A stretch of DNA of 64,000 nucleotides from the NCBI GenBank assembly GCA_002269645.1, contig NIVC01000059.1, positions 682,001 through 746,000 on the forward strand, written 5' to 3'. Source of the stretch: Macrostomum lignano. Its lineage: Eukaryota. This document shows, one piece after another, positions 1 through 55,530 of this stretch (the stretch's first letter is position 1; every line of letters begins with the position of its first letter). The notes beneath the pieces are model-generated. The model was not told where the DNA came from, did not search any database, and saw only the letters and a list, made by a program, of their open reading frames with translations. The position numbers were made by a program, and so were the translations under genes.

Positions 1-42
<42 letters not shown>

Positions 43-104
43 GTGTCTGTCTGTCTTAGCGTCTGTCTGTCTGTCTGTCCGTCTGTCTGTCTGTCTGTCT
101 GTCC

Positions 105-200
<96 letters not shown>

Positions 201-236
201 TAGCGTCTGTCTGTCTGTCTGTCCGTCTGTCTGTCC
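1..236. repeat. (GTCT)n/(GTCC) microsatellite, probably intronic to TNFR-like gene 1
   Basis: Direct tetranucleotide array; ORFs 41..268 and 43..243 are its translation. Confidence 0.97.
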
Positions 237-580: not shown

Positions 581-1025
581 AAAGTACGCCCAAGACTGCC
601 CTAAGCTCGACGAGGTCAAGCCAACTACTACTACACTCCATCCTGCATCGAGATCGAGTAAGATGACTCAATTTTCCACTAATAATATTGGAAAGTTACC
701 GGAACAGACTAACATCGTTCATACCAATCGAGCGGGTGATTACGTCACCAAGAATGTCTCCATCACGCCGCAACCGGATGGCAAATCAACTCTTTCCAGA
801 ATTCCAATCTGGTTGTGGATTGCCATTGGTATCGTCGTTACTGCAGTGATTATAGCGATAGTGCTTTTAATTATTAGAGTTTGCCTCAATAAGAGACGTC
901 CAAGGTCGAATTCAAAAGAGGGTCAGACGGCACCTCTTGTCCGCCAGGAGGAGGGCTGTATTGGTAATTCTGTGCCCTCGATTGTTCTAGCAGCTGGTGC
1001 GATTAGAGAGCGCAGTCAGATTTGA
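581..1025 (+). CDS. TNFR-like receptor paralog 1, terminal exon (end of CRD, S/T stalk, TM, cytoplasmic tail); exon 1 lies upstream of the window
   Basis: Acceptor ttcactttcag|a at 580/581, phase 2. It reads (R)KYAQDCPKL, matching (R)RYAFDCPQL of paralog 3 exon 2. TM is LWIAIGIVVTAVIIAIVLLII followed by RVCLNKRR. Confidence 0.75.
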
Positions 1026-2156
1026 ATCATCGACTCGTTTGTAATATACTCGCAGCAACATTGAAAAGTCGCCACTCTATGCGCCGGTGAACAATTTCTC
1101 TTGGACTATTCTGAAATAAAATATACGAGAAAACTGATCGAGCTAGCTTTAATCCGCCCCTTCTGTGATGGCGACTTTTTGATGTTGCTGAGTATAGATG
1201 TACTGCATGCTACACTTTACTATCCAAGTTGAAATATGTTTGATTTTTTAAATATTTTGACGAGATTTATTTAACCGGATTTTGTAATCTAGCTGTGTAA
1301 TTTAATTGATATTTATCCCAGAAATCAGAAGCGTATGATAGATTTTCGATAGGATATACGAGCCTTATATGCTGCATCTGTATACATGTAAATAATTGAA
1401 CAATATTAAAACAGTTTTTTACTACACATAAATAGCCAATCGACTAAACTTTACCTAACTGCTGTACATTATACGAGTACCAATATTTTCGTAGCATATG
1501 TCCAAAATTAACTTGAACATGGTACTGAATATGCGTTAATGAAATTCTGAACTCAACACCATTCTTTGGAGTTTTCTGTTCCTTTTTATGAGTATTCTCC
1601 TGACAGTCCTATTTATATGTAGCTTGCAATACAATCATAACAAAAAACGTTCTGAGCCATATACTACTAAATGTATTACCGATTCGATAAATACACGTTC
1701 CTAACCGGTTTTCACGGCCCACTTCTAACACAATCGAGGGTTGCGTCTAATTTCTAGTGTAGACTTTTCCATTTTGCAGGTATACTCCTGCAAAATCCTG
1801 TGTACTCCGATTGCTTCGCTATTTGAAATCTTCTTGGCTTGCTCTTGTGGCGTCAATGTAATGACTAAAGCGAACAATTAATATAAGTCACGCTACTAGC
1901 TGAATAATTAATTTACCATGCCTGTGTGCCGTTACGCAATTATGCAATCACTACAGCTTGGAGTAGCTAGTAATACGAGAGTGCATTCGAGCGTAGTATT
2001 CACATGGACAACTAGAGTTAAAGGAATCTAGCACGCGCACTCGTGTTTCAGCCATAGACGCACAAGTCAAAGTGCTTGATTCCCATTCTTATTTGATCCA
2101 ACATGTGTTGCTAAAGTAGACAAGGGTGGAGCTGGGGGTGTGGAGTTAGACTTGAA

Positions 2157-2667
2157 CCATAGACAAAATATGCGCGAGCTAGTCTGAACATTCTTGCACG
2201 ATTGAAAGAAGATAATGCTTGTAGTCTATGGCTGTTGTGCTAAATATAGATACATTGCGCATTACATTCTTGCACGATTGACATTCCTGCACGGTGTGCA
2301 CATGTAAATTCAAGGTGCTTTTACCATAGACACTTGCATTTCTGCACGCATATGGCGACTTTCAAAGCATTCTTGCACGCTGGATCAAATAAGAATGATA
2401 TATTCCTGCACGGTCACGAGTGCGGGAATGACATCTGCACGAGTGCGCGCTAGCGCACGAGTGCACGATGTCCTTCACGCACGAGTGAACGTGAAGGAAT
2501 TCCATTGTCGGATGATTCATCGTGCAGGAATGCACAAAACCGTGCAGGAATGCATTTCTGCGCCTAATGCTTTTTCAGTGAGATTTTACCATAGACATCC
2601 ATTCCTGCACGCAAAAGAGTGCAAGAATGCCATTCTTGCATGGAAAATCAGCCGACAATGTCTATGA
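2157..2667. repeat. Cluster of CCATAGAC/GTCTATGG termini and CATTCYTGCACG motifs in both orientations (probable MITE remnants)
   Basis: CCATAGAC near 2157, 2325 and 2589; GTCTATG(G) near 2224 and 2660; many cattc(c/t)tgcacg and cgtgcaggaatg copies. Confidence 0.55.
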
Positions 2668-3151
2668 GTATTCAAAAACTGGGTGTGGCTAAGCTTTGCT
2701 AGGTATGGTTACAAATATGGAAACCGCCGCCGACAGATCATTCTGAATAATTCTAAAAATAGCATTTAGCCTAAAAATTAAAACGTACAGTAGCTACACC
2801 TGAAAACATACGTATTAGCAACGTTAAAGAAATCCTGGGTAAGCACAGTAATTGAATGCACAATTGCAGTCCAAGAGGTACACTGAGTAACTAAAAATAG
2901 CTCTGAATCAAATAGTTTTGGAGGATTCCAGCTTAACAGCGATATATATGTAAGAGGGGTAGTAAGCCAAAAATTGTCACTCAGTGCACGCAAAGAACTA
3001 CCTGCCCAAAACTTCACTATCTCGGTGAGCCTCCATTAGACTTCGTTGATGTCTGACACACCAGTGGACAACTCAGTGAACCAACCACCTTAAGCCCAAT
3101 CACTCGTCGACGGCAGGCCCGGCACCCGTCGACGAGAGTAGCGTCTCGATC

Positions 3152-3841
3152 ATGTTCAAGACAATGTCCGTACACACTATGACAGCCGTCATGTCGCTGA
3201 TGTTTGTCACAGTTGCTGCTGTATCCGTCGAGAAACTTCAAATCCACTACTGTCCACCTGACGAGTTCGCCGACTCGATGGGCCACTGTCAGAGCTGCGA
3301 CTGGTGTCGAAGAATCCAACCGGTGGATGGCGATGTCGAGCAAGTCTCGCTTGAACATCTGCACAGACAGGACATCTGCGATCGGTTTGGCGCGCTCTGC
3401 TTCGCCTCGCAGATGAGCACCGCTGTTCAGAAGCTGGAAGCGAAGCTTGAAGCATTTCAAACGACGCCAAACAGCATCAAATCGGCGGATTTAATTGCAA
3501 CACGAGATGCGCAGAAGAAGATCGCGGGAGCTGTTCTCATTGAATTCAAGTCGTCATCAATAAACTCCACAAAGCATAGCGAGACTCGTCCACGGTCCAA
3601 GCCTGCTCCAATCATTGCTGGAGCCGTTTCAGTGGTAGGTCTGGCTACAATCGTGTCGATTGTAGCCGTTTTTCTCCGGAGACGAAGGTCAGCTCAAAAA
3701 CGACGTCAGAAAGCGTTGCTGCATGATTCACTGGACAACGCTAAGAGTACAGAGGAAGGACTCTGTGACTCGAGGAGCTCAATTGAGCGGACACGGGAGT
3801 GCATACAGGACAGAAATGCAGGGCGAGTCATTGCAGGTTAA
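3152..3841 (+). CDS. TNFR-like receptor paralog 2, single open frame of 229 aa
   Basis: Signal-peptide-like N-terminus; CRD C-x11-C-x2-C-x2-C-x23-C-x6-C (CPPDEFADSMGHCQSCDWC...LHRQDICDRFGALC); TM IIAGAVSVVGLATIVSIVAVFL then RRRR. A possible donor at gcag|gttaat (3837) could extend the C-terminus. Confidence 0.8.
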   Translation: MFKTMSVHTMTAVMSLMFVTVAAVSVEKLQIHYCPPDEFADSMGHCQSCDWCRRIQPVDGDVEQVSLEHLHRQDICDRFGALCFASQMSTAVQKLEAKLEAFQTTPNSIKSADLIATRDAQKKIAGAVLIEFKSSSINSTKHSETRPRSKPAPIIAGAVSVVGLATIVSIVAVFLRRRRSAQKRRQKALLHDSLDNAKSTEEGLCDSRSSIERTRECIQDRNAGRVIAG

Positions 3842-5465
3842 TGTGTAGTTATGAGGGTCAGGGGTGTCGCCACCAGGGGGACATTGGGACATGTCCCCCA
3901 CCAAAAGCTATGGGGGGACATACAAATGCTTTTCCCACCGCCCCACCGTGATGGAAATCAATAGTTTTGCTTTAGGGCGCCAAAATATAGCGCCTGTGGC
4001 GCCCAAAGGAGTTGCTATACAAAATTACCACGATTCCAAAAATAATGTAGGAATTTAGTCATGTAAAATTCTTAACTCAAATTCTTAAATCAAATTCTTA
4101 AATCAAAGTGCTCCATTTAGCCCCTCATCCCTCTTATCTATAGTGGCTTGAAATTTCCATCATTGGTAAATCTTGAATTATGTAGCTGTAGCCTGTAGGG
4201 TCTTCTTACGCTCGTATAGTTAAAATTGAATCCATTACCAATACAACAAGTGAATTATTGTCGTTCAATTTATGTATATATTTTTTGTATTTATTGGACA
4301 TTCATTTTTTGTTTTACTGTGTTTCTGTTGCTAAACAAGAATTATTTGCAGATAGCTACTATAGGGGCCCTACTCCGTCGCTCGCTAATTTTCATTTAGT
4401 AAAAAATAAATATCGAATCAGAATCATTAACTGTACAAGCATATATGCGTTGATTCTATTCCATGTGCATGTACATGGCTCCTATAATGCTCGAACTTTC
4501 ATTTGTCATGCAAGCAATCAAAAGCCGTGTCCAAGAAAAAATTAGACATGGCTAATTCTGTTAAACAATTATTTTGTTTAACAGAAATCGTGTTTGAGGT
4601 TGATTTTTCTAACAGTAGCTAGCTAAGAACATTTCCCTTGTACATTAATTAGATTGCTTTTCAAATCATCAATAATCGACTCTCATATGTAAGCTAAGTT
4701 CAATTTGAAATTTTCGCGTTGTACTATTTTAGCGGAGAAAATGTGTCGATTGAAATAAACTTTTTATTAGCAGGCTGCTTTTATAGCTTGTGTTTCGGTA
4801 TATTTTCTTCAAAACATTGACTTCCAAAGAAAATTTATTCATGAACTTAATTATTCACCGCAATGAGTGCGGCCTGTGGCGCTAAAATGACTGCTAACAA
4901 TGCCTTCCCCAAAAATATATAGGAATTTGTTATTTGCCATGTAGAAATATTGGCTTTACGTGTCCCCTCCATAAAATACCTGGTGGCCTGGCGACCATTA
5001 TTAAAGCCATTAATAACGAAATTTTCCATTTGCTTTTTTTTATTTTAACGTTCTCTTTCTACTAAATAACTGCCTATTTTAGGTTAAGACATGCATATAT
5101 GGAGAATCTCCAATTGACATGGACAATTTAAACTTTGGTTTAGTTCCATGTTGCACTGCTTGACAAAAATGCGTGAGCAATTGTTTTATCCAACCCTCCC
5201 CGCATGCACGATCCACGTACACGGTAGATTTATACTAAGTAAATGTACATTTTTACATAATGTACAATTAGCTACAGTTCTAAATTTAGAAGCACTATTC
5301 ATTATGGGTACAGGTATGACGTTTGAACTCGCGTACAGCTATATAAATAGGCATAAGTAGCCATGTAAGTTTACAAGCCAACCTTTCTTCGGAGTAGCAG
5401 AGCTACTGCAGCCTTGACGCAACTTTAACAAGATTAAACAATCTGGTTCTAAATTGCACAGAGTC

Positions 5466-5683
5466 ATGAGACCAATGGCTTCGCATCTAATTTTTGGAGT
5501 GACAATTATTGTAATTTCTATTAACAATTATGTCGCAATAGCAACTACAATGACAGAAAATCAAACGGTTCGGTGCAAGGAGGGAGAGTTTGCTAACTTT
5601 CACGGAGAATGCATAAACTGCTCCTGGTGCAACAGCGAGTCCCTGGAGGGTCAAGAGCGTCTTCATCGACAGTCTATTTGCAG
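5466..5683 (+). CDS. TNFR-like receptor paralog 3, exon 1
   Basis: ATG 5466; hydrophobic leader; CKEGEFANFHGECINCSWC...LHRQSIC; donor tgcag|gtaaat, phase 2. Confidence 0.8.
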
Positions 5684-6613
5684 GTAAATACTAATTATTT
5701 ATTCTAAATTTAGTAAGCCAACATGGACTACTTTTAAGTCACTAAAATACGAGCTATATGTGCATGCAAAGCGTGCCGTTAGTCAACTGTTTAAACATTA
5801 AATTTCACTTTAAAAATGCAAGTTTCAAACCGAAGAAGTCTGAAACATTATATATTATTGAAGAGCGGCAATGTAAGCATGTTTGTCAGCAAGATCCGGA
5901 TGATTATTATTGTTATTTTTTATATCTATGACCACTGGTTATGTGTTTGGAGCTCTTACGTCTATGGCCAAGATAAATGACTGTTGCCGACTAGCTACTG
6001 GTCTGTCTATGTCTATGGCCAAGTAGCTGTGGGCAAAAATAGTAGTTAGCTAAACACATGTTCATCGGATTTCCAAAAAGGGGACATACTCGTACATGTA
6101 TTTGAGCTAGAATTTTGTGAGAGAAACTGCATGATTGAATTATTTGAATTTTTTGTGGCGACCCCTTTTCATCGGTCTATAACACATGTTGCAGAAGAAA
6201 ACTTTAGCAGTTCAGCTATACTAAATTTTCACTTACCCAAGACACTGACATTAGCTATGACGTTGCCCAGAAGTCATTTCTCAATTTCGAATAACAAACA
6301 AACCAGAAAAAAACTAAGTTTTTATAATTATCAGGTCCAAGCAAGCTACACTACAGTACAAAGTTTTTTAACAGTTTTTCCTTCGTAAACTTTTATCAAA
6401 ACGGAATTTAGATAACAACCAAGCGTTTCTGACTCACTCTTAGTATAATCTAAAGCTACGAACTATAAAGTGCTCTAAAAATAAAATCTAATCGATAGAA
6501 GATATCTAAGAAAAACAGTAACAATTGAGCATATTGCATACTAATTTCGTATAGATCAATTTCTTTATTAAACCTTGCTTATTTAAATGTACGTAATTCC
6601 TAACTTTTTTCAG

Positions 6614-7058
6614 ACGGTACGCATTTGACTGTCCTCAGCTGCAGCGAGAGCTGAGTACGGAGCAGCCTGAATCGGCAGGACCTACAAGCCCGTCAACTGC
6701 ACAAACTGACAACCGAGATTCACCTGTCACTTCAAGCCCATCATCACCGTCACCATCCGACGTGACTGACAATGGCCCAGCCGTCCACTCAGTTCCCAAT
6801 GCTCCCCCTCCGGTGTGGGCTTGGGTTGTCGGCTTCAGCGCACTTGTTGTTGTCGGTTTAGGAGTGGCTTTGATCATTTATACTCGGCGAGAAGAAATAT
6901 TCGCCACGTTTAAACGCCGGGATTTAAGAAGAAACGAGGAACAGACACAGCAGACTGAGCCGTTTGTTGGCAACCGCTTGCAACCGGCGAACTCATCGAT
7001 TTCAATTGAAATGACGGCCAGAGAGCAGATCGCATGCAGAAATAATCGGTCTTTGTAA
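6614..7058 (+). CDS. TNFR-like receptor paralog 3, exon 2
   Basis: Acceptor tttttcag|a. The frame joins exon 1 (663 nt in total, 220 aa). It contains RYAFDC, an S/P/T stalk and TM VWAWVVGFSALVVVGLGVALIIY. Confidence 0.8.
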
Positions 7059-8656: not shown

Positions 8657-10172
8657 TGGGTAGAGGGAAGGGAGAGGATGGGCAGAGGGAAGGGAGAGGA
8701 TAGGCAGAGGGAAGGGAGAGGATGGGCAGAGGGAAGGGAGAGGATAGGCAGAGGGAAGGGAGAGGATGGGCAGAGGGAAGGAAGAGGATGGGCAGAGGGA
8801 AGGAAGAGGATGGGCAGAGGGAAGGGAGAGGATGGGCAGAGGGAAGGGAGAGGATGGGCAGAGGGAAGGGAGAGGATGGGCAGAGGGAAGGGAGAGGATG
8901 GGCAGAGGGAAGGGAGAGGATGGGCAGAGGGAAGGGAGAGGATGGGCAGAGGGAAGGGAGAGGATGGGCAGAGGGAAGGGAGAGGATGGGCAGAGGGAAG
9001 AGAGAGGATGGGCAGAGGGAAGGGAGAGGATGGGCAGAGGGAAGGGAGAGGATGGGCAGAGGGAAGGGAGAGGATGGGCAGAGGGAAGGTAGAGGATGGG
9101 CAGAGGGAAGGGAGAGGATGGGCAGAGGGAAGGGAGAGGATGGGCAGAGGGAAGGGAGAGGATGGCAGAGGGAAGGGAGAGGATGGGCAGAGGGAAGGGA
9201 GAGGATGGGCAGAGGGAAGGGAGAGGATGGGCAGAGGGAAGGGAGAGGATGGGCAGAGGGAAGGTAGAGGATGGGTAGAGGGAAGGGAGAGGATGGGTAG
9301 AGGGAAGGGAAAAGATGGGCAGAGGGAAGGAAGAGGATGGGCAGAGGGAAGGGAGAGGATGGGCAGAGGGAAGGAAGAGGATGGGCAGAGGGAAGGGAGA
9401 GGATGGGCAGAGGGAAGGGAGAGGATGGGCAGAGGGAAGGGAGAGGATGGGCAGAGGGAAGGAAGAGGATGGGCAGAGGGAAGGGAGAGGATGGGCAGAG
9501 GGAAGGGAGAGGATGGGCAGAGGGAAGGGAGAGGATGGGCAGAGGGAAGGGAGAGGATGGGCAGAGGGAAGGGAGAGGATGGGCAGAGGGAAGGGAGAGG
9601 ATGGGCAGAGGGAAGGGAGAGGATGGGCAGAGGGAAGGGAGAGGATGGGTAGAGGGAAGGGAGAGGATGGGCAGAGGGAAGGGAGAGGATGGGCAGAGGG
9701 AAGGAAGAGGATGGGCAGAGGGAAGGGAGAGGATGGGCAGAGGGAAGGGAGAGGATGGGCAGAGGGAAGGAAGAGGATGGGCAGAGGGAAGGGAGAGGAT
9801 GGGCAGAGGGAAGGGAGAGGATGGGCAGAGGGAAGGGAGAGGATGGGCAGAGGGAAGGGAGAGGATGGGCAGAGGGAAGGGAGAGGATGGGCAGAGGGAA
9901 GGGAGAGGATGGGCAGAGGGAAGGGAGAGGATGGGCAGAGGGAAGGGAGAGGATGGGCAGAGGGAAGGGAGAGGATGGGCAGAGGGAAGGGAGAGGATGG
10001 GTAGAGGGAAGGGAGAGGATGGGCAGAGGGAAGGGAGAGGATGGGTAGAGGGAAGGGAGAGGATGGGTAGAGGGAAGGGAGAGGATGGGCAGAGGGAAGG
10101 GAGAGGATGGGCAGAGGGAAGGGAGAGGATGGGCAGAGGGAAGGGAGAGGATGGGCAGAGGGAAGGGAGAGG
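8657..10172. repeat. 22-bp purine-rich minisatellite (GATGGGCAGAGGGAAGGGAGAG)n
   Basis: Direct reading; near-perfect units, three GGG tracts each. Confidence 0.97.
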
Positions 10173-10949
10173 GTGGATTGGGAGAAAGCTTGATACGGAG
10201 AGGGGAAGGGTAGGGGGGATGGAAAAAGAAGTGGGGTGCTTGTAGGTGCGGAGATGAATAGATAGCAGAACAGTAGAGGAGGAGGTTGATATAAGAATGG
10301 TGAGATTAGATATGAAGGCTGAGGATGATATATGCGTAGCGTAATAAGAATAGGTAGCCCCTTTTATACATCATGCAATCTCTAAATTTCATATCTAATG
10401 TCTATTCTCTGGATAATTAGCAAAAATTAATCTCAGGATACATGAAAACTTTTCCTTTGATTAATGCTGAATGCAGGGAATAATAGCTCACGGAATATAT
10501 TCCCAAAAATGTTTCATTTACTAGGTTTCCGAGTTAAAAAGTGTTTTTTTTATTTAAAACTTATTATTTCTGTGTTTAAAGACCTTATTTTAATCTAATA
10601 AATCTAGATGAAAGAATTCATATGAGCTACATGTATTAGCTAAATGATGACAAGTTGATTCTGCAGTTAGACTCCATTGTCACGCACGTACAATGCCTAA
10701 AACGCTAACAATTATCACTGATTCTGAAGTCACCAATTAATAAAAGAAACTTAAATTTCGGTTTTTACCTTGATTTAGGATTATCTCAGCTATTGTATAT
10801 CCATATTTCGTTGAGGACTAAAATCTTTGAACTCAAACAGGTAAAGTGCAACTCTTGCTTGCGGGTGACAGATGTTCAAAGCTTTACTAGATTGCTGTAA
10901 AAAAAGAATAATTGATTACACCTGCCCCAATTGGGCCAGATGTGCAACC

Positions 10950-12509: not shown

Positions 12510-14110
12510 CTTCAGAGAGAATGAGAGGGCGGGAGAGGGAGGGAAAAAGAAGGGACACAGAGGAGGAAAGGAAGCGAGAGAGGTGTAGAGAGGAAGGAAG
12601 AGAGGGGTGGAGAAGGGAGAGAGGGGTGGAGAGGAAGGAAGAGGAAAGGAGAGGGCTGAAGGGGAAGGGAGAGAGGGGTGGTGAGGAAGGGAGAGAGGGG
12701 TGGTGAGGAAGGGAGAGAGGGGAGGTGAGGAAGAGAGAGAGGGGTGGTGAGGAAGAGAGAGAGGGGTGGTGAGGAAGAGAGAGAGGGGTGGTGAGGAAGA
12801 GAGAGAGGGGTGGTGAGGAAGAGAGAGAGGGGTGGTGAGGAAGAGAGAGGAAAGGAGAGGGGTGAAGGGGAAGGGAGAGGAAAGGAGAGGAGTGGAGAGG
12901 AAGGGAGAGGGGTGGAGAGGAAAGGGGAGGAAAGGAGAGGAGTGGAGAGGAAGGGAAAGGGGTGGAGAGGAAGGGGGAGGAAAGGAGAGGGGTGGAGAGG
13001 AAGGGAAAGGGGTGGAGAGGAAAGGGAGAGGGGTGGAGAGGAAGGGAGAGAGGGGTGGTGAGGAAGGGAGAGAGGGGTGGTGAGGAAGGGAGAGAGGGGT
13101 GGTGAGGAAGGGAGAGAGGGGTGATGAGGAAGAGAGAGGGGTGGAGAGGAAGGGAAAGGGGTGGAGAGGAAGGGGGAGAAAAGGAGAGGGGTGGAGAGGA
13201 AAGGGAGAGAGGGGTGGTGAGGAAGAGAGAGAGGGGTGGTGAGGAAGGGAGAGAGGGGTGGTGAGGAAGAGAGAGGAAAGGAGAGGGGTGGAGAGGAAGG
13301 GGGAGAGGGGTGGTGAGGAAGGAAGAGAGGGGAGGTGAGGAAGAGAGAGAAGGGTGATGAGGAAGGGAGAGAGGGGTGGTGAGGAAGAGAGAGAGGGGTG
13401 GTGAAGAAGGGAGAGAGGGGTGGTGAGGAAGGAAGAGAGGGGTGGTGAGGAAGAGAGAGAGGGGTGGTAAGGGAGGGAGAGAGGGGTGGTGAGGAAGAGA
13501 GAGAGGGGTGGTGAAGAAGGGAGAGAGGGGTGGTGAGGAAGAGAGAGAGGGGTGGTGAGGAAGAGAGAGAGGGGTGGTGAGGAAGAGAGAGAGGGGTGGT
13601 GAGGAAGAGAGAGAGGGGTGGTGAGGAAGAGAGAGAGGGGTGGTGAAGAAGGGAGAGAGGGGTGGTGAGGAAGAGAGAGAGGGGTGATGAGGAAGAGAGA
13701 GAGGGGTGGTGAGGAAGAGAGAGAGGGGTGGTGAGGAAGAGAGAGAGGGGTGGTGAGGAAGAGAGAGAGGGGTGGTGAGGAAGAGAGAGAGGGGTGGTGA
13801 AGAAGGGAGAGAGGGGTGGTGAGGAAGAGAGAGAGGGGTGGTGAGGAAGAGAGAGAGGGGTGGTGAAGAAGGGAGAAGGGGGGTGAGGAAGAGAGAGAGA
13901 GGTGGTGAGGAAGAGAGAGAGGGGTGGTGAGGAAGAGAGAGAGGGGTGGTGAAGAAGGGAGAGAGGGGTGGTGAGGAAGAGAGAGAGGGGTGGTGAGGAA
14001 GAGAGAAAGGAGTGGTGAGGAAGGGAGAGAGGGGTGGTGAGGAAGAGAGAAAGGGGTGGTGAGGAAGGGAGAAAGGGGTGGTGAGGAAGGGAGAGAGGGG
14101 TGGAGAGGAA
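12510..14110. repeat. 22-bp purine-rich minisatellite (GAGGAAGAGAGAGAGGGGTGGT)n and variants
   Basis: Direct reading; ORFs 12418..14376 and 12512..14134 are its translation. Confidence 0.95.
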
Positions 14111-14599
14111 GGAAAAGGGATGGGGAGAAAGCAATATGCCGTAGGGAGCAGGTTGATGGGCAGATAAAGATGGGGTAAGCGAGGGAGAATAAATTTTAGG
14201 AATAATGAGAGAGAGAGCCGGGGGGGGGAGAAAAAGAGAAAAGGGAAAGAGAGGGATGAGACGGTGGAAAGGAAAGGAGAGATGGGAACGGAGAGAGGGA
14301 AGATGAGAGAGGGGATCTGAGAAGATACAGAAATGAAAATAAGAGAGAAGTGAGAAATAAGGGTAGTGAGAAACACTGGAGCAGTGATCTGTTAGAACAG
14401 GAACAGTGTTAATTTCTCAATGTCTAATTATCTTGCTGTTTTTCAACTTCCAACATCAGTAGCGTTAAGGGGTAAATTTACGTCACCTGTGTCCTCTCCA
14501 CTTACCTAAACTCCTCTAACCCAGCTAATTAATTAAAGCATACAAACAACAGCAAACCCAGAACCTCAGCATGAAAAACAGACGCAGTGAGTCTGTATG

Positions 14600-16443
14600 C
14601 TACTCGAACCTCACGGGCGCCTCGGCTCGAATCACTTTCCGACAGATGGGGCATGTCTGCAGGTTGGCAGAGCAGCGGCTGCAGCAGCACAGGTGACCGC
14701 AGTCCAGCAGAATTACGTTAATCCGATGCACCATGCACACCTTGCAGGTGCGCCAGTCCGTCTCGGGCGACTCCTCCGGCTCTCCGAACGCTGACGAGCT
14801 TCGCAGACGGTGCAGCTCGGACTCTCTGAATGTTTCGATGTCCATGGAACGCACAGTCAGAACGTCGTGTTGGCTGACAACGGCCGCCAGCAGCTGATCA
14901 GAAGTCGCGAAGTCGTCACCCACAAACATCAGCCGCATCTCCATTGCTGTGCGAACCTCGGCAGCTGAGAATCCCAGACGGATGGCCATTCGAGCTGACG
15001 GAACGTCGGATCGAGCTCGGATCTCTCTCGCCTCGATTCGATACCTGACTCCCAGGTTTCCAGAGTACGACATTTTCACCTGTGATTGTTGCTCATCCTG
15101 CTGTCCGTGATTACGGCTCGAGCTCAGGACCTCTGAAAAGCGGGCCACAACGTCAGGCGCCACGAACTGTCGAACCCGTCGCACAAACGCGGCGCCTCGA
15201 CGGCTCAGCAGGTGGCCGCACCTCGGAGACCACACGGCGTGGGCGATCCACGCGTTGCCGAGCAGCTGGGAGCCCGCAACGGACAACCGCAGGTTGCACG
15301 CGAAGCAGATCAGCAAGTTGAACGTCCCGACTGTCTGCAGGAAGAACCCCGCTGACGCGACCTGATCTGCCGGTTCAAACAGCTCGACATTCTCCAGAGT
15401 CCTCAGACGGTCGCTCTGACGGACGAAGCCCGGATGCTCGATCGGCAGCAGAGACGCCTCCAGCTCGAGCATCTCGAGTGCCTGCACCGCTCGAGGCTCC
15501 GCGGCTGACCTTAGCGTCTGTGGTGGAGGCAGCGACGTCTGGGAAACCGCAGCGAGAATTTCCGGTTCCGACAGTGTGACAGTCGGACGTCCCGTGCTTC
15601 CGTCCGACATCGCCAGCGACCGCCACTCGTCCTCCGTCTGGGGCTCCGTCACGACCTCCGTTGACATCTCAGACGCCTCGCTGCACTGCTCTGACTGCGA
15701 CACGCTGTCCATCTCGAGGTCCGGCTTGTTGCCGACGTCCATCCCCAGCACGAACGGACACGTGGGGAACTCCTTGGCGTGGAGCTGCATCGGCGACTCT
15801 CCTTCAGCGAGGCTGCCGGGCTCCAGTGCTCCCTGGCAGAAGGCGCACCGAACTCGGCCATCGGTGGCCGATTGGAACAGCCCCGCCGATGCCATCGACC
15901 TTGCCGTGTCAGCGGTCACGGATGGGCCGAAACTGCGAGCTCTGGCCGACTCCGACATCATCTCCCTGACTGCTCCGCTGCCCTCCGCGAAGCTGAGCTG
16001 CTGGGGCACGCGGCTGTCGCTGCTGGCTCCGGTGTAGTAGCGGAGCAGCTTGCAGATCGCTGAGCTGACGGCATGATCCGCTGACCCGCTCGCTTGAAGA
16101 GTTTTCAAAAACCTTGTTCCAAAATATTGTAGTGCCATGCCAAGCATTGCGAGGTACGGAATGTTCAAGGCTGACGGAACCCCTGAAATTCCTAGATTTT
16201 CGATATGATTGATTATCTGAGTGTAACAAAGCGTCATTGCGTTATTTTCTCCCTCCAGTTTTTTGGCAACTTTTTGTTTTCCTTCAGTTTCCAATGAAGT
16301 CATGTTTTTGAACAGAGCTTTCGTTTTATTGGTAAACCATTTGAAAGCATTCCATGCAGTTCTCCTGAAGCTGGCCTTCTTGTCCTCCTGATCTTGCGTT
16401 GCCGACGACCTTGATCCAGAAATCGAGTTTCGAGCTTCCTGTT
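14600..16443 (-). CDS. Inhibitor of apoptosis (IAP/BIRC family): N-terminal extension, BIR, BIR, UBA-like, RING; one large terminal exon
   Basis: BIR1 CAFC-x18-H-x6-C; BIR2 CFAC-x18-H-x6-C; UBA-like MAIRLGF...GDDFATSDQLL; RING CKVC...CGHLCCCSRC...CPIC. The frame stays open 46 codons upstream of ATG 16303 to an acceptor (tacttgcag|aa) at 16443. Confidence 0.9.
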
Positions 16444-19689: not shown

Positions 19690-21310
19690 CTTCCGCTAAT
19701 GCAATAATCGCTTTCTCAGGTTGTGCAACAATCCACGTCTCAGCGAGCGCAATAATCTCTTTTTTAGACAGCGCAGTAATCAGCTTCTCAGCTAGTGCAA
19801 TAATCCTTGGTTTATTAATAGCAATAATCCTTGATTAATCAAGTGCAATAATCCTTGATTAATCAAGTGCAATAATCCTTGGTTTATCAAGTGCAGTAAT
19901 CTTTGGCTTATCAAGTGAAATAATCCTTGGTTCATCAAGTGCAATAATCCTTTGTTTATCAAGTGCAATAATCCTTGGTTTATCAAGTGCAATAATCCTT
20001 GGTTTATTAAGTGCAATAATCCTTGGTTTATCAAGTGCAATAATCCTTGGTTTATCTAGCGCAGTAATCCTTGGCTTATCAGGTGCAATAATCCTTGGTT
20101 TATCAAGTGCAATATTTGTTTATCAAGTGCAATAATCCTTGGTTTATCAAGTGCAATAATCCTTGGTTTATCAAGTGCAATAATCCTTGGTTTATCTAGC
20201 GCAGTAATCCTTGGCTTATCAAGAGCAATAATCCTTGGTTTATCAAGTGCAATAATCCTTGGTTTATCAAGTGCAATAATCCTTGGTTTATCAAGCGCAG
20301 TAATCTTTGGCCTATCAAGTGCAATAATCCTTGGCCTATCAAGTGCAACAATCCTTGGTTTATCAAGTGCAGTAATCCTTGGTTTATCAAGTGCAATAGT
20401 CCTTGGTTTATCAAGTGCAATAATCCTTGGTTTATCAAGTGCAGTAATCCTTGGTTTATTAAGAGCAATAATCCTTGGCTTATCGAGTGCAGTAATCCTT
20501 GGTTTGCCAAGAGCAATAATCCTTGGTTTATCGAGTGCAGTAATCCTTAGTTTTCCAAGTGCAGTAATCCTTGGTTTATTAAGAGCAATAATCCTTGGCT
20601 TATCGAGTGCAGTAGTCCTTGGTTTATTAATAGCAATAATCCTTGAATAATCCAGTGCATTAATCCTTGGCTTATCAAGTGCAACATTCTTTACTATCAA
20701 GTGCAATAATCCATGGCTTATCAAGCGCTGTAATCCTTGGCTTATCAAGTGCAATAATCCTTGGTTTATCAAGTGCAATAATCCTTGGTTTATCAAGTGC
20801 AATAATTCTTTGTTTATCAAGTGCAATAATCCTTGGTTTATCAAGCGCAGTAATCCTTGGCTTATCAAGTGCAGTAATCCTTGGTTTATCAAGTGCAATA
20901 ATCCTTGGTTTATCAAGCGCAGTAATCTTTGGCCTATCAAGTGCAATAATCCTTGGTTTATCAAGTGCAGTAATCCTTGGCCTATCAAGTGCAATAATCC
21001 TTGGTTTATCAAGTGCAATAGTCCTTGGTTTATCGAGTGCAGTAATCCTTGGTTTTTCAAGTGCAATAATCCTTGGCTTCTTGAGTGCAGTAATCCTTGG
21101 TTTGCCAAGAGCAATAGTCCTTGGTTTATCGAGTGCAGTAATCCTTGGTTTTCCAAGTGCAGTAATCCTTGGTTTATTAATAGCAATAATCCTTGGCTTC
21201 TTGAGTGCAGTAATCCTTGGTTTGCTAAGAGCAATAGTCCTTGGTTTATCGAGTGCAGTAGTCCTTGGTTTATTAATAGCAATAATCCTTGGCTTATCGA
21301 GTGCAGTAAT
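19690..21310. repeat. 24-bp minisatellite (GTGCAATAATCCTTGGTTTATCAA)n
   Basis: Direct reading; source of the LINQGLLH / DKPRIIAL pseudo-ORFs. Confidence 0.97.
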
Positions 21311-22489
21311 CTAAGTGTTTTTATTTAGTCCTTTAATAAAACCTTTTAATAAAAAATTTAACTCTACTTTTTTTAAACTACTTAGATTCGAACCTAGGTC
21401 GCTGCATTAGCAGTCTGGTCTGTTCAGCTCTAGGCTAGCTCTCATCGAAGTTATCAGTGATGTTGTACCACTTATATAATTCAACACTCACACCAAGTCA
21501 GGTAGAGTAAAAAGTCTCACGAAGCAGTTATGACATACTCAATTTCTTAGGCAAGTCAGTACCAGTGTCTATGAAAGTTTACAATATGGTTACGTAATAT
21601 AAATTCAGTACTGCGCTATGCTTTCACACTCAAAGCTGTGACGCAATTCAATTGAGTGTCAAATTCAGCCAGTACACAGACGATAAATAAAGTGTATTGT
21701 GATGCAATCTATTTCAGAATCAGAATTCAACCAGTCAGTTTTTCTGCTAGCATTCTTACAATGCATTTCAAGTCGAAAGAGCTGCTTGACCTTTGCAAAA
21801 AAGCATGTTTTTCGAATATTTAATCGCTTTAGCATCGAGCAATTTCTTAGCCACGATGCATGTACCGTCACGGAAAAATTTCTGATCGAATGGTGCAAGT
21901 TTGAAGAAAATCGGTTCAGCCGTTTTTGCTAAAATCGATCACACACGCACGCACTCACAAACAGACCATTTTTAGTATATTAGACTAGCCATTTAGCCCC
22001 CCGCTGGGGAGCCCGAAAATGACACCAATTGGTTTTTATTTTGACACAAAAGTAACCTTACTATAATTATCCAAAATGTTGATTTCCATTAATCAAAAAT
22101 TATCTTTTCTCATTTTGGCAAAAATAAATTGCCATGAATCAGAACTTTCAACAGCCAAAAAAGTTTCCTTCATCAGCCCAAAACCCTTTCTCAATCAGCA
22201 AATAGTGCTGATCCTTTCAAGCACAAACTCTTAGTGCATATCGTCGCTGGCCGGGGCATATTCTGATCCGCAGAAAATATGCAAATCATTGACGTCCTTA
22301 GACCCTCTCTCTTAATTAGCCTAAATCAAAGAATGAAACCTTTAATAAATGCGCTGGTATTTCCTATTAGCAGAAATCAGCATCACTTGTGTGTACAATT
22401 TCATTATCTGAATTACATGAGCTACTTCAGCCGTACTACCTGACTACCTGACAATCGCCCAACAACCATGAGTCCATGAGCCTTGGCAT

Positions 22490-28814: not shown

Positions 28815-30960
<2,146 letters not shown>

Positions 30961-31499: not shown

Positions 31500-32111
31500 A
31501 GAAGTCAGAAGCTACATGTAGTTTATTCAAAACTTTTTATTATTTGTTGGCTCCTCAGGGGGGGGGTCGCTGATAGAAAAAGCCTCATGTAAAAAATAAA
31601 AGAAGCTTCATGTCGAAGTTAAAAGATTCATTTGGGAATCCCTACGATGTCGAGGCTTGCAGGGAATCGCTATAATTCTGTAGTGCTATAATAACTCTGG
31701 GGAGAATTACTGAAATGTCAACAATGCTTTAGGGTTAGGGTTAGGTTTAGGGTTAGGCTAGGGTTAGGGTTAGGTTTAGGGTTAGGCTAGGGTTAGGGTT
31801 AGGTTTAGGGTTAGGCTAGGGTTAGGGTTAGGTTTAGGGTTAGGCTAGGGTTAGGGTTAGGTTTAGGGTTAGGCTAGGGTTAGGGTCAGAAGGTCGACAG
31901 ATTTTTTTATATTTCAAGGCTTATGGGGGGCATCGCTGAGATGTCAAGGGGGGAAGTTGATATGCATGCTAAGGCTTGTGGGGGAATTGCTGACATGCCA
32001 AGGCTTACAAGGGACTGCTGAGGTATATTGCAAAGAGACGCTACATGTAGTAGTTTATTAAAAAACTTGTGCTGCATTTTTGGCTCCCCAACGGGGGGTG
32101 CTAATTGCTAG
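31500..32111 (+). mobile_element. Helitron-like 3' portion in plus orientation (5' end unresolved)
   Basis: ggctccccaacggggggtgctaattgCTAG|T at 32108-32112 mirrors the 3' end of element B; carries the same satellite. Confidence 0.55.
31729..31885 (+). repeat. Interstitial telomere-like higher-order repeat, 29-bp unit TTAGGG-TTAGGT-TTAGGG-TTAGGC-TAGGG x5
   Basis: Direct parsing. Confidence 0.95.
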
Positions 32112-33139: not shown

Positions 33140-34160
33140 ACAAGGGACTTGCTGAGATGCCAATTGGCTCAAATTGGGGGAGTTGCTGAGATGCCAATTG
33201 GCTCAAATTGGGGGAGTTGCTGAGATGCCATGGCTTAAACTGGGGGAGCTGCTGAGATGCCAAGGCTCAAACTGGGAGAGTTGCTGAGATGCCAATTGGC
33301 TCAAACTGGGGGAGTTGCTGAGATGCCATGGCTCAAACTGGGGGATTTGCTGAGATGCCATGGCTTAAATTGGGGGAGTTGCTGAGATGCCAATTGGCTC
33401 AAATTGGGGGAGGGGGGTTGCTGAGATGCCAAGGCTCAAATTGGGGGAGTTGCTGAGATGCCATGGCTTAAACTGGGGGAGCTGCTGAGATGCCATGGCT
33501 CAAATTGGGGGAGTTGCTGAGATGCCAAGGCTAAAACTGGGGGAGTTGCTGAGATGCCAAGGCTAAAACTGGGGGAGCTGCTGAGATGCCAAGGCTAAAA
33601 CTGGGGGAGTTGCTGAGATGCCAAGGCTAAAACTGGGGGAGTTGCTGAGATGCCAAGGCTAAAACTGGGGGAGTTGCTGAGATGCCAAGGCCCAAACTGG
33701 GGGAGCTGCTGAGATGCCATGGCTCAAATTGGGGGAGTGGCTGAGATGCCATGGCTCAAATTGGGGGAGTTGCTGAGATGCCAAGGCTAAAAATGGGGGA
33801 GTTGCTGAGATGCCATGGCTCAAATTGGGGGTTGCTGAGATGCCAAGGCTCAAACTGGGGAGTTGCTGAGATGCCATGGCTCAAACTGGGGGAGTTGCTG
33901 AGATGCCAAGGCTAAAAATGGGGGAGTTGCTGAGATGCCATGGCTCAAATTGGGGGTTGCTGAGATGCCAAGGCTCAAACTGGGGAGTTGCTGAGATGCC
34001 ATGGCTCAAACTGGGGGATTTGCTGAGATGCCATGGCTCAAATTGGGGGAGTTGCTGGGATGCTAAGGCTCAAAGTGGGGGAGTTGCTGAGATTCCAAGG
34101 CTCGAATTGGGGGAGGGGTGCTGAGATGCCAAGGCTCAAACTGGGGGAGTTGCTGAGATT
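33140..34160. repeat. ~30-bp satellite (GGGGGAGTTGCTGAGATGCCAAGGCTCAAA[C/T]T)n
   Basis: Direct reading. Confidence 0.95.
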
Positions 34161-49589: not shown

Positions 49590-50152
49590 ATGCCTGTCAA
49601 TCAACTAATCCGAGGTCCAAGACGCAGCCTAGCAACTGCACTCCTGTTGGGTATCTGTTTGGTTGCTGCTACGCATCTGATTTTACCAATTCTGTCTCCA
49701 TTGCCCCAGCCGGCCTACACTGGCCAAGATGCTGTTCCCAGTTCTCTCCCAGACTATGCTCAGCCAGATGACTTGCACGCCGCCCGTCTTGGTCGTCGGT
49801 ACCTTAACAACGATCAACCGTCGCCTTGGGGTCACCCAGTGATGGACATGTCCTGCAGTATGCACACCTGCTTCAATTTCTCCCGCTGTCGTCAAGGCTT
49901 CACAGTTTATGTTTATCCAAAGCCAACTGGCGAGGCCGATGGTGTTCTTGGCAGCGATGACGAGTCCAATGCCGAGTTGAGTGGCGGAGGCGAAACCTAT
50001 GATAAAATTTTGCGAGCTATCCGACTGTCGCCCTATTATACTGACGATCCGGAGAAGGCCTGCATATTTGTGCCTGGCATCGATACACTAGACAGGGACT
50101 CGTTAAGTCCTAGGTTTAAGGCTAAAGCTGCTGCCGTGATCACCGGATACAG
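49590..50152 (+). CDS. EXT1: Exostosin-1-like glycosyltransferase, exon 1
   Basis: Type II TM; CSMHTCFNFSRC, VYVYP, SPYYTDDPEKACIFVPGIDTLDRD; donor ag|gttagt. Confidence 0.95.
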
Positions 50153-50274
50153 GTTAGTTTATTATGCAGTTTCCCTGTAAACTGTTCAACCCTATCTATC
50201 AGAGATGCAACTTTTTCTGTTGACAGCAAACTGTAAAATGTAGATATATCCGTTTGTGTCTCAGTAATCTATCG

Positions 50275-51150
50275 ATATCTTCTCAGCCCAGGTGTCTCAT
50301 AAACTCTCTAGATCTCAGCCCAGGTGTCTTATCTCTATCGCTATCTCAGCCCACGTGTCTCATCTCTATCGCTATCTCAGCCCAGGTGTCTCATCTCTAT
50401 CGCTATCTCAGCCCAGGTGTCTTATCTCTATCGCTATCTCAGCCCAGGTGTCTTATCTCTATCGCTATCTCAGCCCAGGTGTCTTATCTCTATCGCTATC
50501 TCAGCCCAGGTGTCTTATCTCTATCGCTATCTCAGCCCAGGTGTCTTATCTCTATCGCTATCTCAGCCCACTTGTCTTATCTCTATCGCTATCTCAGCCC
50601 AGGTGTCTTATCTCTATCGCTATCTCAGCCCAGGTGTCTTATCTCTATCGCTATCTCAGCCCACGTGTCTTATCTCTGTCGCTATCTCAGCCCAGGTGTC
50701 TTATCTCTGTCGCTATCTCAGCCCAGGTGTCTTATCTCTATTGCTATCTCAGCCCAGGTGTCTTATCTCTATTGCTATCTCAGCCCAGGTGTCTCATTAT
50801 CTGTCTCAATCTCAGTCTAGGTGTCTTATCTCTATTGCTATCTCAGCCCAGGTGTCTTATCTCTATTGCTATCTCAGCCCAGGTGTCTTATCTCTATTGC
50901 TATCTCAGCCCAGGTGTCTCATCTCTATCGCTATCTCAGCCCAGGTAATGTCATCAATAGTCTATCTCAATCTCAAATCATGTATCTCATCAGTAGTCTA
51001 TCTCAATCTCAAATCATGTATCTTATCAATATTCTATCGCTATCTCAGCCCAGGTATCTCATCATTAGTTTATGGCTATCTCAGCCCAGGTGTCTCATCA
51101 ATAGTCTATGGCTATCTCAGCCCAGGTATCTCCCCAGCCAGCCCAGGTAT
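50275..51150. repeat. 31-bp intronic minisatellite (CTATCTCAGCCCAGGTGTCTTATCTCTATCG)n
   Basis: Period 31 (50401, 50432, ...). Confidence 0.95.
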
Positions 51151-51160
51151 TAAATTATAG

Positions 51161-51613
51161 CTCACTACACCGCACCTGTCGCACCCGCAGTCACTGGCAC
51201 GGCCGTGGCGAGAACCATTTAATATTCAACCTGTACGCCGGCACCTGGCCTAATTATTACGAGCACGAGTTGGGTATACCCACTAACCGGGCCATTCTGG
51301 CTAAGGCCAGCTTCTCTACTACAAATATTCGATCTTTATTCGACCTGTCATTCCCTCTGGTGCACTCGCAGCACCCGCTGTCCGCGCCAGCCCAGACCGT
51401 GGCGGCCTCGCCCGAGCCCTACTTGGCCAAGGCTAGGCGGCCCATTCTGCTGTCCTTCAAAGGCAAGCGGTACGTTATTGGCAGCGGCAGTGCTAGTAGA
51501 AACTCGCTGTACCATCTGGACAATGGCAAGGATATTCTGCTGTTTACCACCTGCAAGCACGGGGATAATTGGCGACGGTACAGTGATTCCAGATGCGCCT
51601 TGGATAATGCCAG
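51161..51613 (+). CDS. EXT1: EXT1-like exon 2
   Basis: GENHLIFNLYAGTWP, ILAKAS, FKGKRY, LFTTCKHG; phase 2 at both ends. Confidence 0.95.
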
Positions 51614-51639
51614 GTTTGCTTTAATGCTTTATGAGCACT

Positions 51640-53809: not shown

Positions 53810-53884
53810 GTGAGTGGCTGTTATCTAATTTTTTTAAACAAATCATTGGGAATCATATTTGACTCCCTACCTTGAGACAAAGAC

Positions 53885-55530
53885 TTCCAACCCTGACAAT
53901 AAGAATCCCAACCCTGACAATAAGAATCCCAATCCTGACAACAAGAATCCCAATCCTAACTATAAGAGTCCCAATCCTAACTATAAGAGTCCCAATCATG
54001 ACAATAAGAATCCCAATCCTGACAATAAGAATCTCAATCCTGACAATAAGAATCCCAATCCTGACAATAAGAATCCCAATCCTGACAATAAGAATCTCAA
54101 TCCTGACAATAAGAATCCCAATCCTGACAATAAGAATCCCAATCCTGACAATAAGAATCTCAATCCTGACTATAAGACTCCCAATCCTGACTATAAGAAT
54201 CCCAATCCTGACAATAAGAATCCCAATCCTGACAATAAGAATCTCAATCCTGACAATAAGAATCTCAATCCTGACAATAAGAATCCCAACCCTGACAATA
54301 AGAATCCCAATCCTGACAATAAGAATCCCAACCCTGACAATAAGAATCTCAATCCTGACAATAAGAATCCCAATCCTGACAATAAGAATCCCAACCCTGA
54401 CAATAAGAATCTCAATCCTGACAATAAGAATCCCAATCCTGACTATAAGAATCCCAATCCTGACTATAAGAATCCCAACCCTGACTATAAGAGTCCCAAT
54501 CATGACAATAAGAATCCCAATCCTGACAATAAGAATCTCAATCCTGACAATAAGAATCTCAATCCTGACAATAAGAATCTCAATCCTGACAATAAGAATC
54601 CCAATCCTGACTATAAGAATCCCAATCCTGACAATAAGAATCCCAATCCTGACAAAAGAATCTCAATCCTGACAATAAGAATCTCAATCCTGACAATAAG
54701 AGTCCCAATCCTGACTATAAGAATCCCAATCCTGACAATAAGAATCCCAATCCTGACAATAAGAATCTCAATCCTGACAATAAGAATCCCAATCCTGACT
54801 ATAAGAATCCCAATCCTGACTATAAGAATCCCAATCCTGACAATAAGAATCCCAATCCTGACAATAAGAATCTCAATCCTGACAATAAGAATCCCAATCC
54901 TGACTATAAGAATCTTAATCCTGACAATAAGAATCTTAATCCTGACAATAAGAATCTTAATCCTGACAATAAGAATCCCAATCCTGACAATAAGAATCCC
55001 AATCCTGACTATAAGAATATTAATCCTGACAATAAGAATCTTAATCCTGACAATAAGAATCCCAATCCTGACAATAAGAATCTCAATCCTGACAATAAGA
55101 ATCCCAATCCTGACAATAAGAATCTTAATCCTGACAATAAGAATCTTAATCCTGACAATAAGAATCCCAATCCTGACAATAAGAATCCCAATCCTGACTA
55201 TAAGAATCCCAATCCTGACTATAAGAATCCCAATCCTGACAATAAGAATCCCAATCCTGACTATAAGAATCCCAATCCTGACAATAAGAATCCCAATCCT
55301 GACTATAAGAATATTAATCCTGACAATAAGAATCTTAATCCTGACAATAAGAATCCCAATCCTGACAATAAGAATCTCAATCCTGACAATAAGAATCCCA
55401 ATCCTGACAATAAGAATCTTAATCCTGACAATAAGAATCTTAATCCTGACAATAAGAATCCCAATCCTGACAATAAGAATCCCAATCCTGACTATAAGAA
55501 TCCCAATCCTGACTATAAGAATCCCACTCT
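53885..55530. repeat. 21-bp intronic minisatellite (CCTGACAATAAGAATCCCAAT)n
   Basis: Direct reading; source of the NPDNKNP pseudo-ORF. Confidence 0.97.

What the first reader, a model, noticed from the sequence alone, without database searches (positions are those of the whole stretch)
581..7058. Tandem triplet of divergent single-CRD TNF-receptor-like genes
Seen: three same-strand ORFs share the layout leader, 6-Cys domain, S/T/P stalk, TM and short tail without a death domain. They share C-x11-C-x2-C-x2-C-x16/23-C-x6-C, a private LHRQxIC motif (paralogs 2 and 3) and YAxDCPxL (paralogs 1 and 3). Known: this spacing and E-F/Y-x-D-x-L/M resemble the single CRD of BCMA/TACI (CSQNEYFDSLLHACIPC) and Drosophila Grindelwald. 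Inference: a lineage-specific, fast-evolving invertebrate TNFR array that automated annotation would likely miss, since paralogs 1 and 3 are split by an intron inside the CRD.
Basis: partly seen in the sequence, partly recalled or inferred. Interest (0 to 1): 0.78.

Follow-up and report, generated by a model that had tools for sequence, protein, structure and literature searches.

The report
Flatworm tandem TNF-receptor-like gene trio
Three neighbouring genes of the flatworm Macrostomum lignano encode small single-pass membrane proteins whose one cysteine-rich outer domain looks weakly like half of a TNF-receptor module; the genes are real and transcribed but already annotated, and the TNF-receptor link is plausible, not proven.

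Summary
The window is Macrostomum lignano DNA (GenBank NIVC01000059.1). It carries three same-strand paralogs with the layout leader, 6-Cys domain, stalk, TM and a 45-58 aa tail. The Cys spacing is C-x11-C-x2-C-x2-C-x16/18/23-C-x6-C. Paralogs 1 and 3 share a phase-2 intron right after the fifth Cys; paralog 2 has none.

All three are already gene models in an RNA-seq-derived annotation, and their proteins are 100% identical to my spliced models. UniProt auto-names two of them 'TNFR-Cys domain-containing protein'. So the claim that annotation would miss them is wrong.

The TNF-receptor reading is only weakly supported:
- Pfam TNFR_c6 is the top hit for the domain but stays below threshold (family consensus E 0.0017, 19 bits against a cut-off of 29.4) and covers only the N-terminal half.
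- The family profile scores human TNFR1 CRD2 better than 299 of 300 Cys-fixed shuffles.
- It shows no specific similarity to BCMA, TACI, Fn14 or BAFF-R.
- AlphaFold models (pLDDT about 77) show a beta-hairpin followed by helices. Foldseek finds no significant match, TNFR or otherwise.
- No relatives turn up outside M. lignano among 1.8 billion representative proteins.

A diverged second copy of the locus carries the whole trio, with the Cys domain the most conserved part. Interest is modest.

The parts
1..235 (.). (GTCT)n microsatellite inside the intron of paralog 1. The intron runs from window -421 to 580, and exon 1 lies outside the window at -672..-422.
581..1025 (+). Paralog 1 exon 2 (PAA92230.1, BOX15_Mlig028822g1, 231 aa). 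It encodes the last CRD cysteine (597..599), the stalk, the TM (801..887) and a 45-aa tail with the stop codon.
3152..3841 (+). Paralog 2, a CDS without introns (229 aa, called gene). CRD 3251..3400, TM 3605..3676, 54-aa tail.
5466..5683 (+). Paralog 3 exon 1 (PAA92232.1, BOX15_Mlig025889g1, 220 aa). It encodes the leader and CRD cysteines 1-5 (CRD starts at 5574). GT donor at 5684.
5684..6613 (+). Paralog 3 intron, phase 2, at the same position and phase as the paralog 1 intron.
6614..7058 (+). Paralog 3 exon 2. It encodes the sixth CRD cysteine (6630..6632), the S/T/P stalk, the TM (6810..6881) and a 58-aa tail with the stop codon.

Best explanation
**What is shown**
- This is a lineage-specific tandem trio of transcribed Macrostomum lignano genes.
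- Each encodes a small type I membrane protein of 220-231 aa: cleavable leader, one roughly 50-residue 6-Cys ectodomain, a variable stalk, one TM, and a 45-58 aa cytoplasmic tail without a death domain.

**What is inferred**
- The ectodomain is most likely a highly diverged TNF-receptor-type cysteine-rich domain.
- Its N-terminal half keeps the canonical TNFR signature, C-x4-F-x6-C-x2-C-x2-C, predicted as a beta-hairpin plus a CxxC turn.
- Its C-terminal half is a family-specific helical segment that carries Cys5 and Cys6 seven residues apart.
- The proteins would bind the trimeric TNF ligands that are expanded in this free-living flatworm (6-10 genes reported).
- They would signal through adaptors that recognise the conserved acidic E-E-G and N-S-x-x-S-I tail motifs, not through a death domain.
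For: **Gene models and transcription**
- The spliced models equal the annotated proteins.
- The annotation is built from RNA-seq (PMC5730564).

**Topology**
- Hydropathy and positive-inside charge fit a type I protein.

**Pfam TNFR_c6**
- It is the best Pfam family for the isolated domain: p3 E 0.0056, p2 0.012, the p3 second copy 0.026.
- The score rises for the family consensus (E 0.0017, 19.1 bits).
- None of 6 Cys-fixed and 4 full shuffles hit any TNFR model.

**Profile against TNFR1**
- The family HMM aligns C1, F, C2, C3 and C4 to TNFR1 CRD2 at 8.1 bits.
- Only 1 of 300 Cys-fixed shuffles reaches that score.
- The N-terminal half of the PROSITE TNFR pattern, as I recall it, is matched by all three.

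**Source names and structure**
- UniProt names p1, p3 and the p3 second copy 'TNFR-Cys domain-containing'.
- AF2 models of the p3 and p1 domains (pLDDT 76.8 and 76.6) give a beta-hairpin followed by helices. That is the order of elements described for Fn14 and Grnd CRDs (PMC8024323).

**Constraint**
- Between the two copies of the locus, the Cys domain is the most conserved part: dN 0.015-0.018 against 0.07-0.2 in stalk and TM.
- Tail residues are conserved across all six copies.

**Biological context**
- M. lignano has multiple TNF ligands (PMC7519573).
- A preprint counts 6 Eiger-like, 16 Wengen-like and 1 Grnd-like genes in the species.
Against: - Every TNFR sequence match is below the curated threshold (19 bits at most, against 29.4) and covers only 24-25 of 39 profile positions. 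The p1 domain gives no Pfam hit at all.
- One shuffled control gave an unrelated hit at E 0.014, so E near 0.01 is close to noise here.
- A profile search of PDB sequences finds nothing at E<=10.
- hhalign and HMM scores against Fn14, BCMA, TACI and BAFF-R are at noise level.
- Foldseek of both models against PDB gives no TNFR hit. It returns only non-significant LDLR class A modules (E>=2.3, TM<=0.39).
- The second half of the domain (x16-23, x6) fits no described TNFR module spacing.
- Ligand binding, disulfide connectivity and signalling were not tested.
Confidence: 0.55

Rival explanations
1. This is an orphan, Macrostomum-specific family of Cys-rich type I membrane proteins that is not homologous to TNF receptors. 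The C-x11-C-x2-C-x2-C spacing and the aromatic residue would be convergent or chance features. The proteins would serve another extracellular recognition or adhesion role.
For: - No homolog outside M. lignano was found among 5.8 billion clustered or 1.84 billion representative proteins.
- No significant Pfam, PDB-sequence or Foldseek match exists.
- The C-terminal helical half has no TNFR counterpart.
- A chance Pfam hit at E 0.014 in a shuffled control shows how weak the TNFR E-values are.
Against: - The same TNFR family is the top domain hit for several members, and the score improves with the consensus.
- Cys-fixed shuffles never hit a TNFR model.
- The TNFR1 CRD2 alignment beats 299 of 300 shuffles.
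- UniProt's independent rule-based naming agrees.
Confidence: 0.35
2. The trio are true TNFR-type ectodomains but act as non-signalling decoys or co-receptors. One or more copies would be decaying duplicates rather than independent signalling receptors.
For: - The tails are short, with no recognisable domain.
- Overall dN/dS between the two locus copies is high: 0.57 for p2 and 0.98 for p3.
- In the second locus, paralog 1 has lost exon 1, and only one of the three genes is called there.
Against: - All reading frames in the window are intact and transcribed.
- Tail motifs (E-E-G, N-S-x-x-S-I) are conserved across paralogs that are only 25-31% identical.
- The Cys-domain dN is low.
Confidence: 0.1

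Closest known systems
Canonical TNFR/NGFR cysteine-rich domain (Pfam PF00020 TNFR_c6; for example human TNFR1 CRD2, PDB 1EXT)
   Same: - The first four cysteines and the aromatic residue match: C-x4-F-x6-C-x2-C-x2-C here, C-x4-F-x9-C-x2-C-x2-C in TNFR1 CRD2.
- The domain is extracellular in a type I membrane protein.
- It is the best, though sub-threshold, Pfam and profile match.
   Different: - The second half has 16-23 residues before Cys5 and 6 before Cys6, against 7-11 and 7-9.
- That half is predicted helical.
- There is only one domain per protein.
- Scores stay below the curated cut-off.
Single-CRD vertebrate TNFRs: Fn14 (TNFRSF12A), BCMA (TNFRSF17), TACI CRD2, BAFF-R
   Same: - The architecture matches: one CRD, stalk, TM, and a short tail without a death domain.
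- The first-half Cys spacing is similar. Fn14 is C-x12-C-x2-C-x2-C.
- The beta-hairpin is followed by helical elements, as in the Fn14 C2 module.
   Different: - There is no sequence similarity beyond Cys-fixed shuffles, and hhalign probability is at most 1.5%.
- Pfam models for these families give no hit.
- The second-half spacing differs: x8/x2-3 against x16-23/x6.
- The DxL hairpin motif is not conserved. Only p2 has the EFADSM motif.
Drosophila Grindelwald and Wengen
   Same: They are invertebrate single-CRD TNF receptors without death domains. The Grnd ectodomain is a beta-hairpin plus two helices (PMC8024323).
   Different: - Grnd has 8 cysteines, in an X2 module plus a C2 module spaced C-x3-C-x11-C-x3-C. 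This family has 6, with a different spacing.
- The profile search of PDB sequences, which include 6ZSY and 6ZT0, gave no hit.
- Wengen was not compared directly.
Platyhelminth NGFR-like TNFR (SmTNFR family; Bertevello et al. 2020, PMC7519573)
   Same: It belongs to the same phylum and the same proposed ligand class. M. lignano has one such receptor and several TNF ligands.
   Different: - Those receptors have four CRDs and a putative death domain. That paper concluded there is one TNFR per flatworm species.
- The trio has one divergent CRD and no death domain, and was not reported there.

Membership tests
TNFR superfamily CRD (Pfam PF00020 / PROSITE TNFR-Cys) | Score at or above the curated Pfam gathering threshold (29.4 bits) | tested here: not met
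   Best scores are 17.5 bits (p3), 16.5 (p2), 15.4 (p3 second copy) and 19.1 (family consensus). p1 gives none.
TNFR superfamily CRD (Pfam PF00020 / PROSITE TNFR-Cys) | N-terminal module signature C-x(4,6)-[FYH]-x(5,10)-C-x(0,2)-C-x(2,3)-C (pattern recalled from PROSITE PS00652) | tested here: met
   All three paralogs match. None of 6 Cys-fixed shuffles hit TNFR models.
TNFR superfamily CRD (Pfam PF00020 / PROSITE TNFR-Cys) | C-terminal module spacing x(7,11)-C-x(4,6)-[DNEQSKP]-x2-C | tested here: not met
   The spacing here is x16/18/23 then x6. Pfam alignments stop at profile position 24-25 of 39.
TNFR superfamily CRD (Pfam PF00020 / PROSITE TNFR-Cys) | PROSITE profile PS50050 match | not testable with these tools
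   This is known only indirectly. UniProt names p1, p3 and the p3 second copy 'TNFR-Cys domain-containing protein'.
TNFR superfamily CRD (Pfam PF00020 / PROSITE TNFR-Cys) | TNFR-like fold and disulfide connectivity | tested here: inconclusive
   AF2 models (pLDDT about 77) show a beta-hairpin plus helices. Foldseek gives no significant hit to TNFRs or anything else. Coordinates and disulfides could not be inspected.
TNFR superfamily CRD (Pfam PF00020 / PROSITE TNFR-Cys) | Binds a trimeric TNF-family ligand | not testable with these tools
   This needs binding assays or complex modelling with M. lignano TNF ligands.
BCMA/TACI/BAFF-R group | Sequence similarity to the A1-D2 CRD, including the DxL hairpin motif | tested here: not met
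   HMM scores are 1.7, 0.0 and -0.7 bits, within the shuffle distributions. hhalign probability is at most 1.2%. The family Pfam models give no hit.
Fn14 (TNFRSF12A) | A1-C2 CRD with spacing C-x12-C-x2-C-x2-C-x8-C-x2-C | tested here: not met
   Only the first half is similar. The HMM score is 1.1 bits, and 99 of 300 shuffles reach it.
Grindelwald | 8-Cys X2 + C2 ectodomain (C-x3-C-x11-C-x3-C), per PMC8024323 | tested here: not met
   This family has 6 Cys and a different spacing. There is no PDB sequence hit at E<=10.
LDL-receptor class A module (top, non-significant Foldseek hits) | Significant structural or sequence match and an acidic Ca-binding cluster | tested here: not met
   Foldseek gives E>=2.3 and TM<=0.39. 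There is no Pfam Ldl_recept_a hit, and no DxSDE-type cluster in the sequences.

The most novel reading that the evidence does not exclude
The trio would be the first non-NGFR-type TNF receptors of flatworms. Their hybrid ectodomain would join a canonical TNFR A1-type hairpin to a new disulfide-stapled helical module. They would have arisen by tandem duplication to match the TNF ligand expansion in Macrostomum. That would contradict the published view that platyhelminths have one undiversified TNFR.
Probability: 0.35. Interest if true: 0.5.

Novelty: new member of a known kind. Interest (0 to 1): 0.3.

Why it matters
- A published survey concluded that every flatworm has a single NGFR-like TNF receptor, yet M. 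lignano has 6-10 TNF ligands.
- Extra small receptors without death domains would help explain that mismatch.
- They would also give this transgenic, regenerating model a tractable TNF ligand-receptor set.
- The value is limited. The genes are already annotated and auto-named, and a preprint already counts many TNFR-like genes in this species. The TNFR assignment for this trio remains weak.

Tried and rejected
- **Homolog searches** with p3, p2 and a 4-sequence full-length alignment, and a CRD profile against 1.84 billion representatives, returned only the M. lignano proteins themselves.
- **PDB sequence searches** with p3 and with the CRD profile found nothing relevant.
- **hhalign and HMM comparison** with PDB-verified Fn14, BCMA, TACI and BAFF-R sequences gave noise.
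- **Foldseek** of the two AF2 models against PDB, and of the p3 model against BFVD, gave no significant hit. The LDLR class A reading was rejected: non-significant scores, no Pfam hit, no Ca-binding acidic cluster.
- **Zinc-ribbon reading** of the CxxC pairs (Pfam DUF2614, E 0.13) was rejected. The domain lies between the leader and the TM, so it is extracellular.
- **Extra copies in the window:** none found.
- **Literature search** for the gene identifiers: none found.
- **Exact look-up of the neighbouring IAP ORF** failed because the annotated model is longer. It was resolved through the gene list.
Full report
**Source and anatomy**

The window is genomic DNA of the free-living flatworm Macrostomum lignano. 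It lies in assembly GCA_002269645.1, contig NIVC01000059.1, and window position 1 is about record position 682001.

Reading the sequence confirms three same-strand genes:
- Paralog 2 is a single ORF, 3152..3841 (229 aa).
- Paralog 3 is 5466..5683 joined to 6614..7058 across a GT..AG intron (220 aa).
- Paralog 1 has its second exon at 581..1025.

I fetched the DNA 5' of the window. Exon 1 of paralog 1 lies at window -672..-422 and completes a 231-aa protein. The (GTCT)n microsatellite at window 1..235 is inside its intron.

**Is the shared pattern real?**

Yes.
- The ectodomains carry six cysteines spaced C-x11-C-x2-C-x2-C-x18-C-x6-C (p1), with x23 in p2 and x16 in p3.
- Invariant residues are F, A, G and W in the first half and H-R-x-x-I-C in the second.
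LHRQxIC is in p2 and p3 (FHRVKIC in p1). YAxDCPxL is in p1 and p3.
- Pairwise blastp E-values are 3e-15 (p1/p3), 1e-10 (p2/p3) and 1.5e-6 (p1/p2).
- p1 and p3 share a phase-2 intron directly after the fifth cysteine. p2 lacks it.
- Hydropathy shows an N-terminal leader and one TM followed by a basic cluster, which indicates type I topology. Tails are 45, 54 and 58 aa with no death domain.
- One correction: only p3, and partly p1, has an S/T/P-rich stalk.
- No further copy is in the window.

**Annotation status**
- All three genes are already called on the contig.
- My spliced models are 100% identical over 100% of their length to PAA92230.1 (BOX15_Mlig028822g1, p1) and PAA92232.1 (BOX15_Mlig025889g1, p3). 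The 229-aa p2 product is also on record.
- UniProt names p1 (A0A1I8HG65) and p3 (A0A267H3V3) 'TNFR-Cys domain-containing protein'.
- The GenBank annotation of this assembly was made from RNA-seq and transcriptome assemblies with StringTie, TACO and TransDecoder (PMC5730564). The introns are therefore transcript-supported.

**A second copy of the locus**
- Contig NIVC01000366.1 (L002) carries the whole trio in the same order.
- p2' is 85% and p3' 84% identical at protein level to the window copies. p1' exon 2 is only 63% identical.
- p1' exon 1 is missing. Conserved upstream sequence runs straight into the (GTCT)n array.
- Nei-Gojobori estimates between the two copies give dN/dS of 0.98 for p3 and 0.57 for p2 overall.
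- The Cys domain is the most conserved part: dN 0.018 and 0.015, against dS 0.035 and 0.128.
- Stalk and TM evolve at or above the synonymous rate.
- Counts are small. A Fisher test of CRD against the rest gives p = 0.12.
- Across paralogs the tail keeps an acidic E-E-G-like block and an N-S-x-x-S-I motif.

**Is the domain a TNF-receptor CRD?**

The evidence is weak but points one way.

In favour:
- Pfam TNFR_c6 is the best family for the isolated domains: p3 E 0.0056, p2 0.012, p3' 0.026.
- The score rises for the family consensus (E 0.0017, 19.1 bits).
- Ten shuffled controls (six with cysteines held in place) never hit a TNFR model.
- A family HMM scored against PDB-verified sequences aligns C1, F, C2, C3 and C4 to TNFR1 CRD2 at 8.1 bits. 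Only 1 of 300 Cys-fixed shuffles reaches that score.

Against:
- All Pfam scores are below the 29.4-bit cut-off and cover only profile positions 1-25 of 39. p1 gives nothing.
- One shuffled control gave an unrelated hit at E 0.014, which shows where the noise lies.
- Fn14, BCMA, TACI CRD2 and BAFF-R score no better than their shuffles, and hhalign probabilities are at most 1.5%.
- The profile finds nothing among PDB sequences and nothing outside M. lignano among 1.84 billion representatives.

**Structure**
- AlphaFold2 models of the p3 and p1 domains (4-sequence alignments, mean pLDDT 76.8 and 76.6) agree on the layout.
- Both show a beta-hairpin between Cys1 and Cys2, a helical turn over C-x2-C, and a long helix carrying Cys5 and Cys6.
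- Hairpin followed by helices is the order described for the Fn14 and Grindelwald ectodomains (PMC8024323).
- Foldseek against PDB returns no significant match. The top, meaningless hits are LDL-receptor class A modules (E>=2.3, TM<=0.39), with no TNFR among them. BFVD gives nothing for the p3 model, the only one searched there.
- Grindelwald membership fails on its published definition: 8 Cys, X2 plus C2 modules.

**Most likely function**

The proteins are probably divergent, lineage-specific TNFR-type receptors. They keep the N-terminal module of a TNFR CRD and have a family-specific helical second half.

The context fits. M. lignano has several TNF ligands, while a survey reported only one NGFR-like receptor per flatworm (PMC7519573). 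A preprint counts 6 Eiger-like, 16 Wengen-like and 1 Grnd-like genes in this species. I could not verify whether the trio is among them.

Ligand binding, and signalling through the conserved tail motifs rather than a death domain, are inferences. The main rival is an unrelated orphan Cys-rich membrane protein family. It is not excluded.

**Verdict**
- Novelty is modest. These are uncharacterised but annotated members of a known kind.

Noticed in passing
window 14600..16303 (-), gene continues upstream beyond 17058: An inhibitor-of-apoptosis-like gene (BIR domain plus C3HC4 RING; annotated product 621 aa) lies about 7.5 kb downstream of the trio on the opposite strand. IAPs act in TNFR signalling complexes in other animals, so the proximity is suggestive, but it may be chance.
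   Followed up: partly
L002 (NIVC01000366.1) 4150..6214: In the second copy of the locus, paralog 1 lacks exon 1. Conserved upstream sequence runs directly into the (GTCT)n array. Yet the exon 2 frame is still open, with dS 0.52 and dN/dS 0.32 against the window copy, far more diverged than p2 (dS 0.12) or p3 (dS 0.065). Only p3' is called as a gene there.
   Followed up: partly
window 2190..2611: Ten copies of ATTCYTGCACG in both orientations (11 in the window against 1.7 expected) cluster 540-960 bp upstream of paralog 2. The cluster is absent from the second locus, whose intergenic spacer is about 660 bp shorter. It is probably a transposable-element or MITE insertion rather than a conserved regulatory block.
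   Followed up: partly
window 31729..31886: An interstitial block of telomere-type TTAGGG repeats, about 27 copies.
   Followed up: no
window 8657..10176, 12649..14112, 19794..21311, 33144..34159, 51689..53649, 53880..55526: Large 21-32 bp minisatellite arrays with strong GC skew. They create long spurious ORFs of up to 652 aa with no Pfam match.
   Followed up: partly
window 49590..52301 (+) and 28833..29780 (-): ORF fragments with an Exostosin GT47 glycosyltransferase domain, probably exons of one gene interrupted by repeat arrays, and an RNase H ORF that indicates a retroelement remnant.
   Followed up: no
window 3152..3166: The annotated paralog 2 starts at MFKTM. The second copy starts at the equivalent of the second Met (MSVHT), so the true start may be the downstream ATG at 3164.
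   Followed up: no
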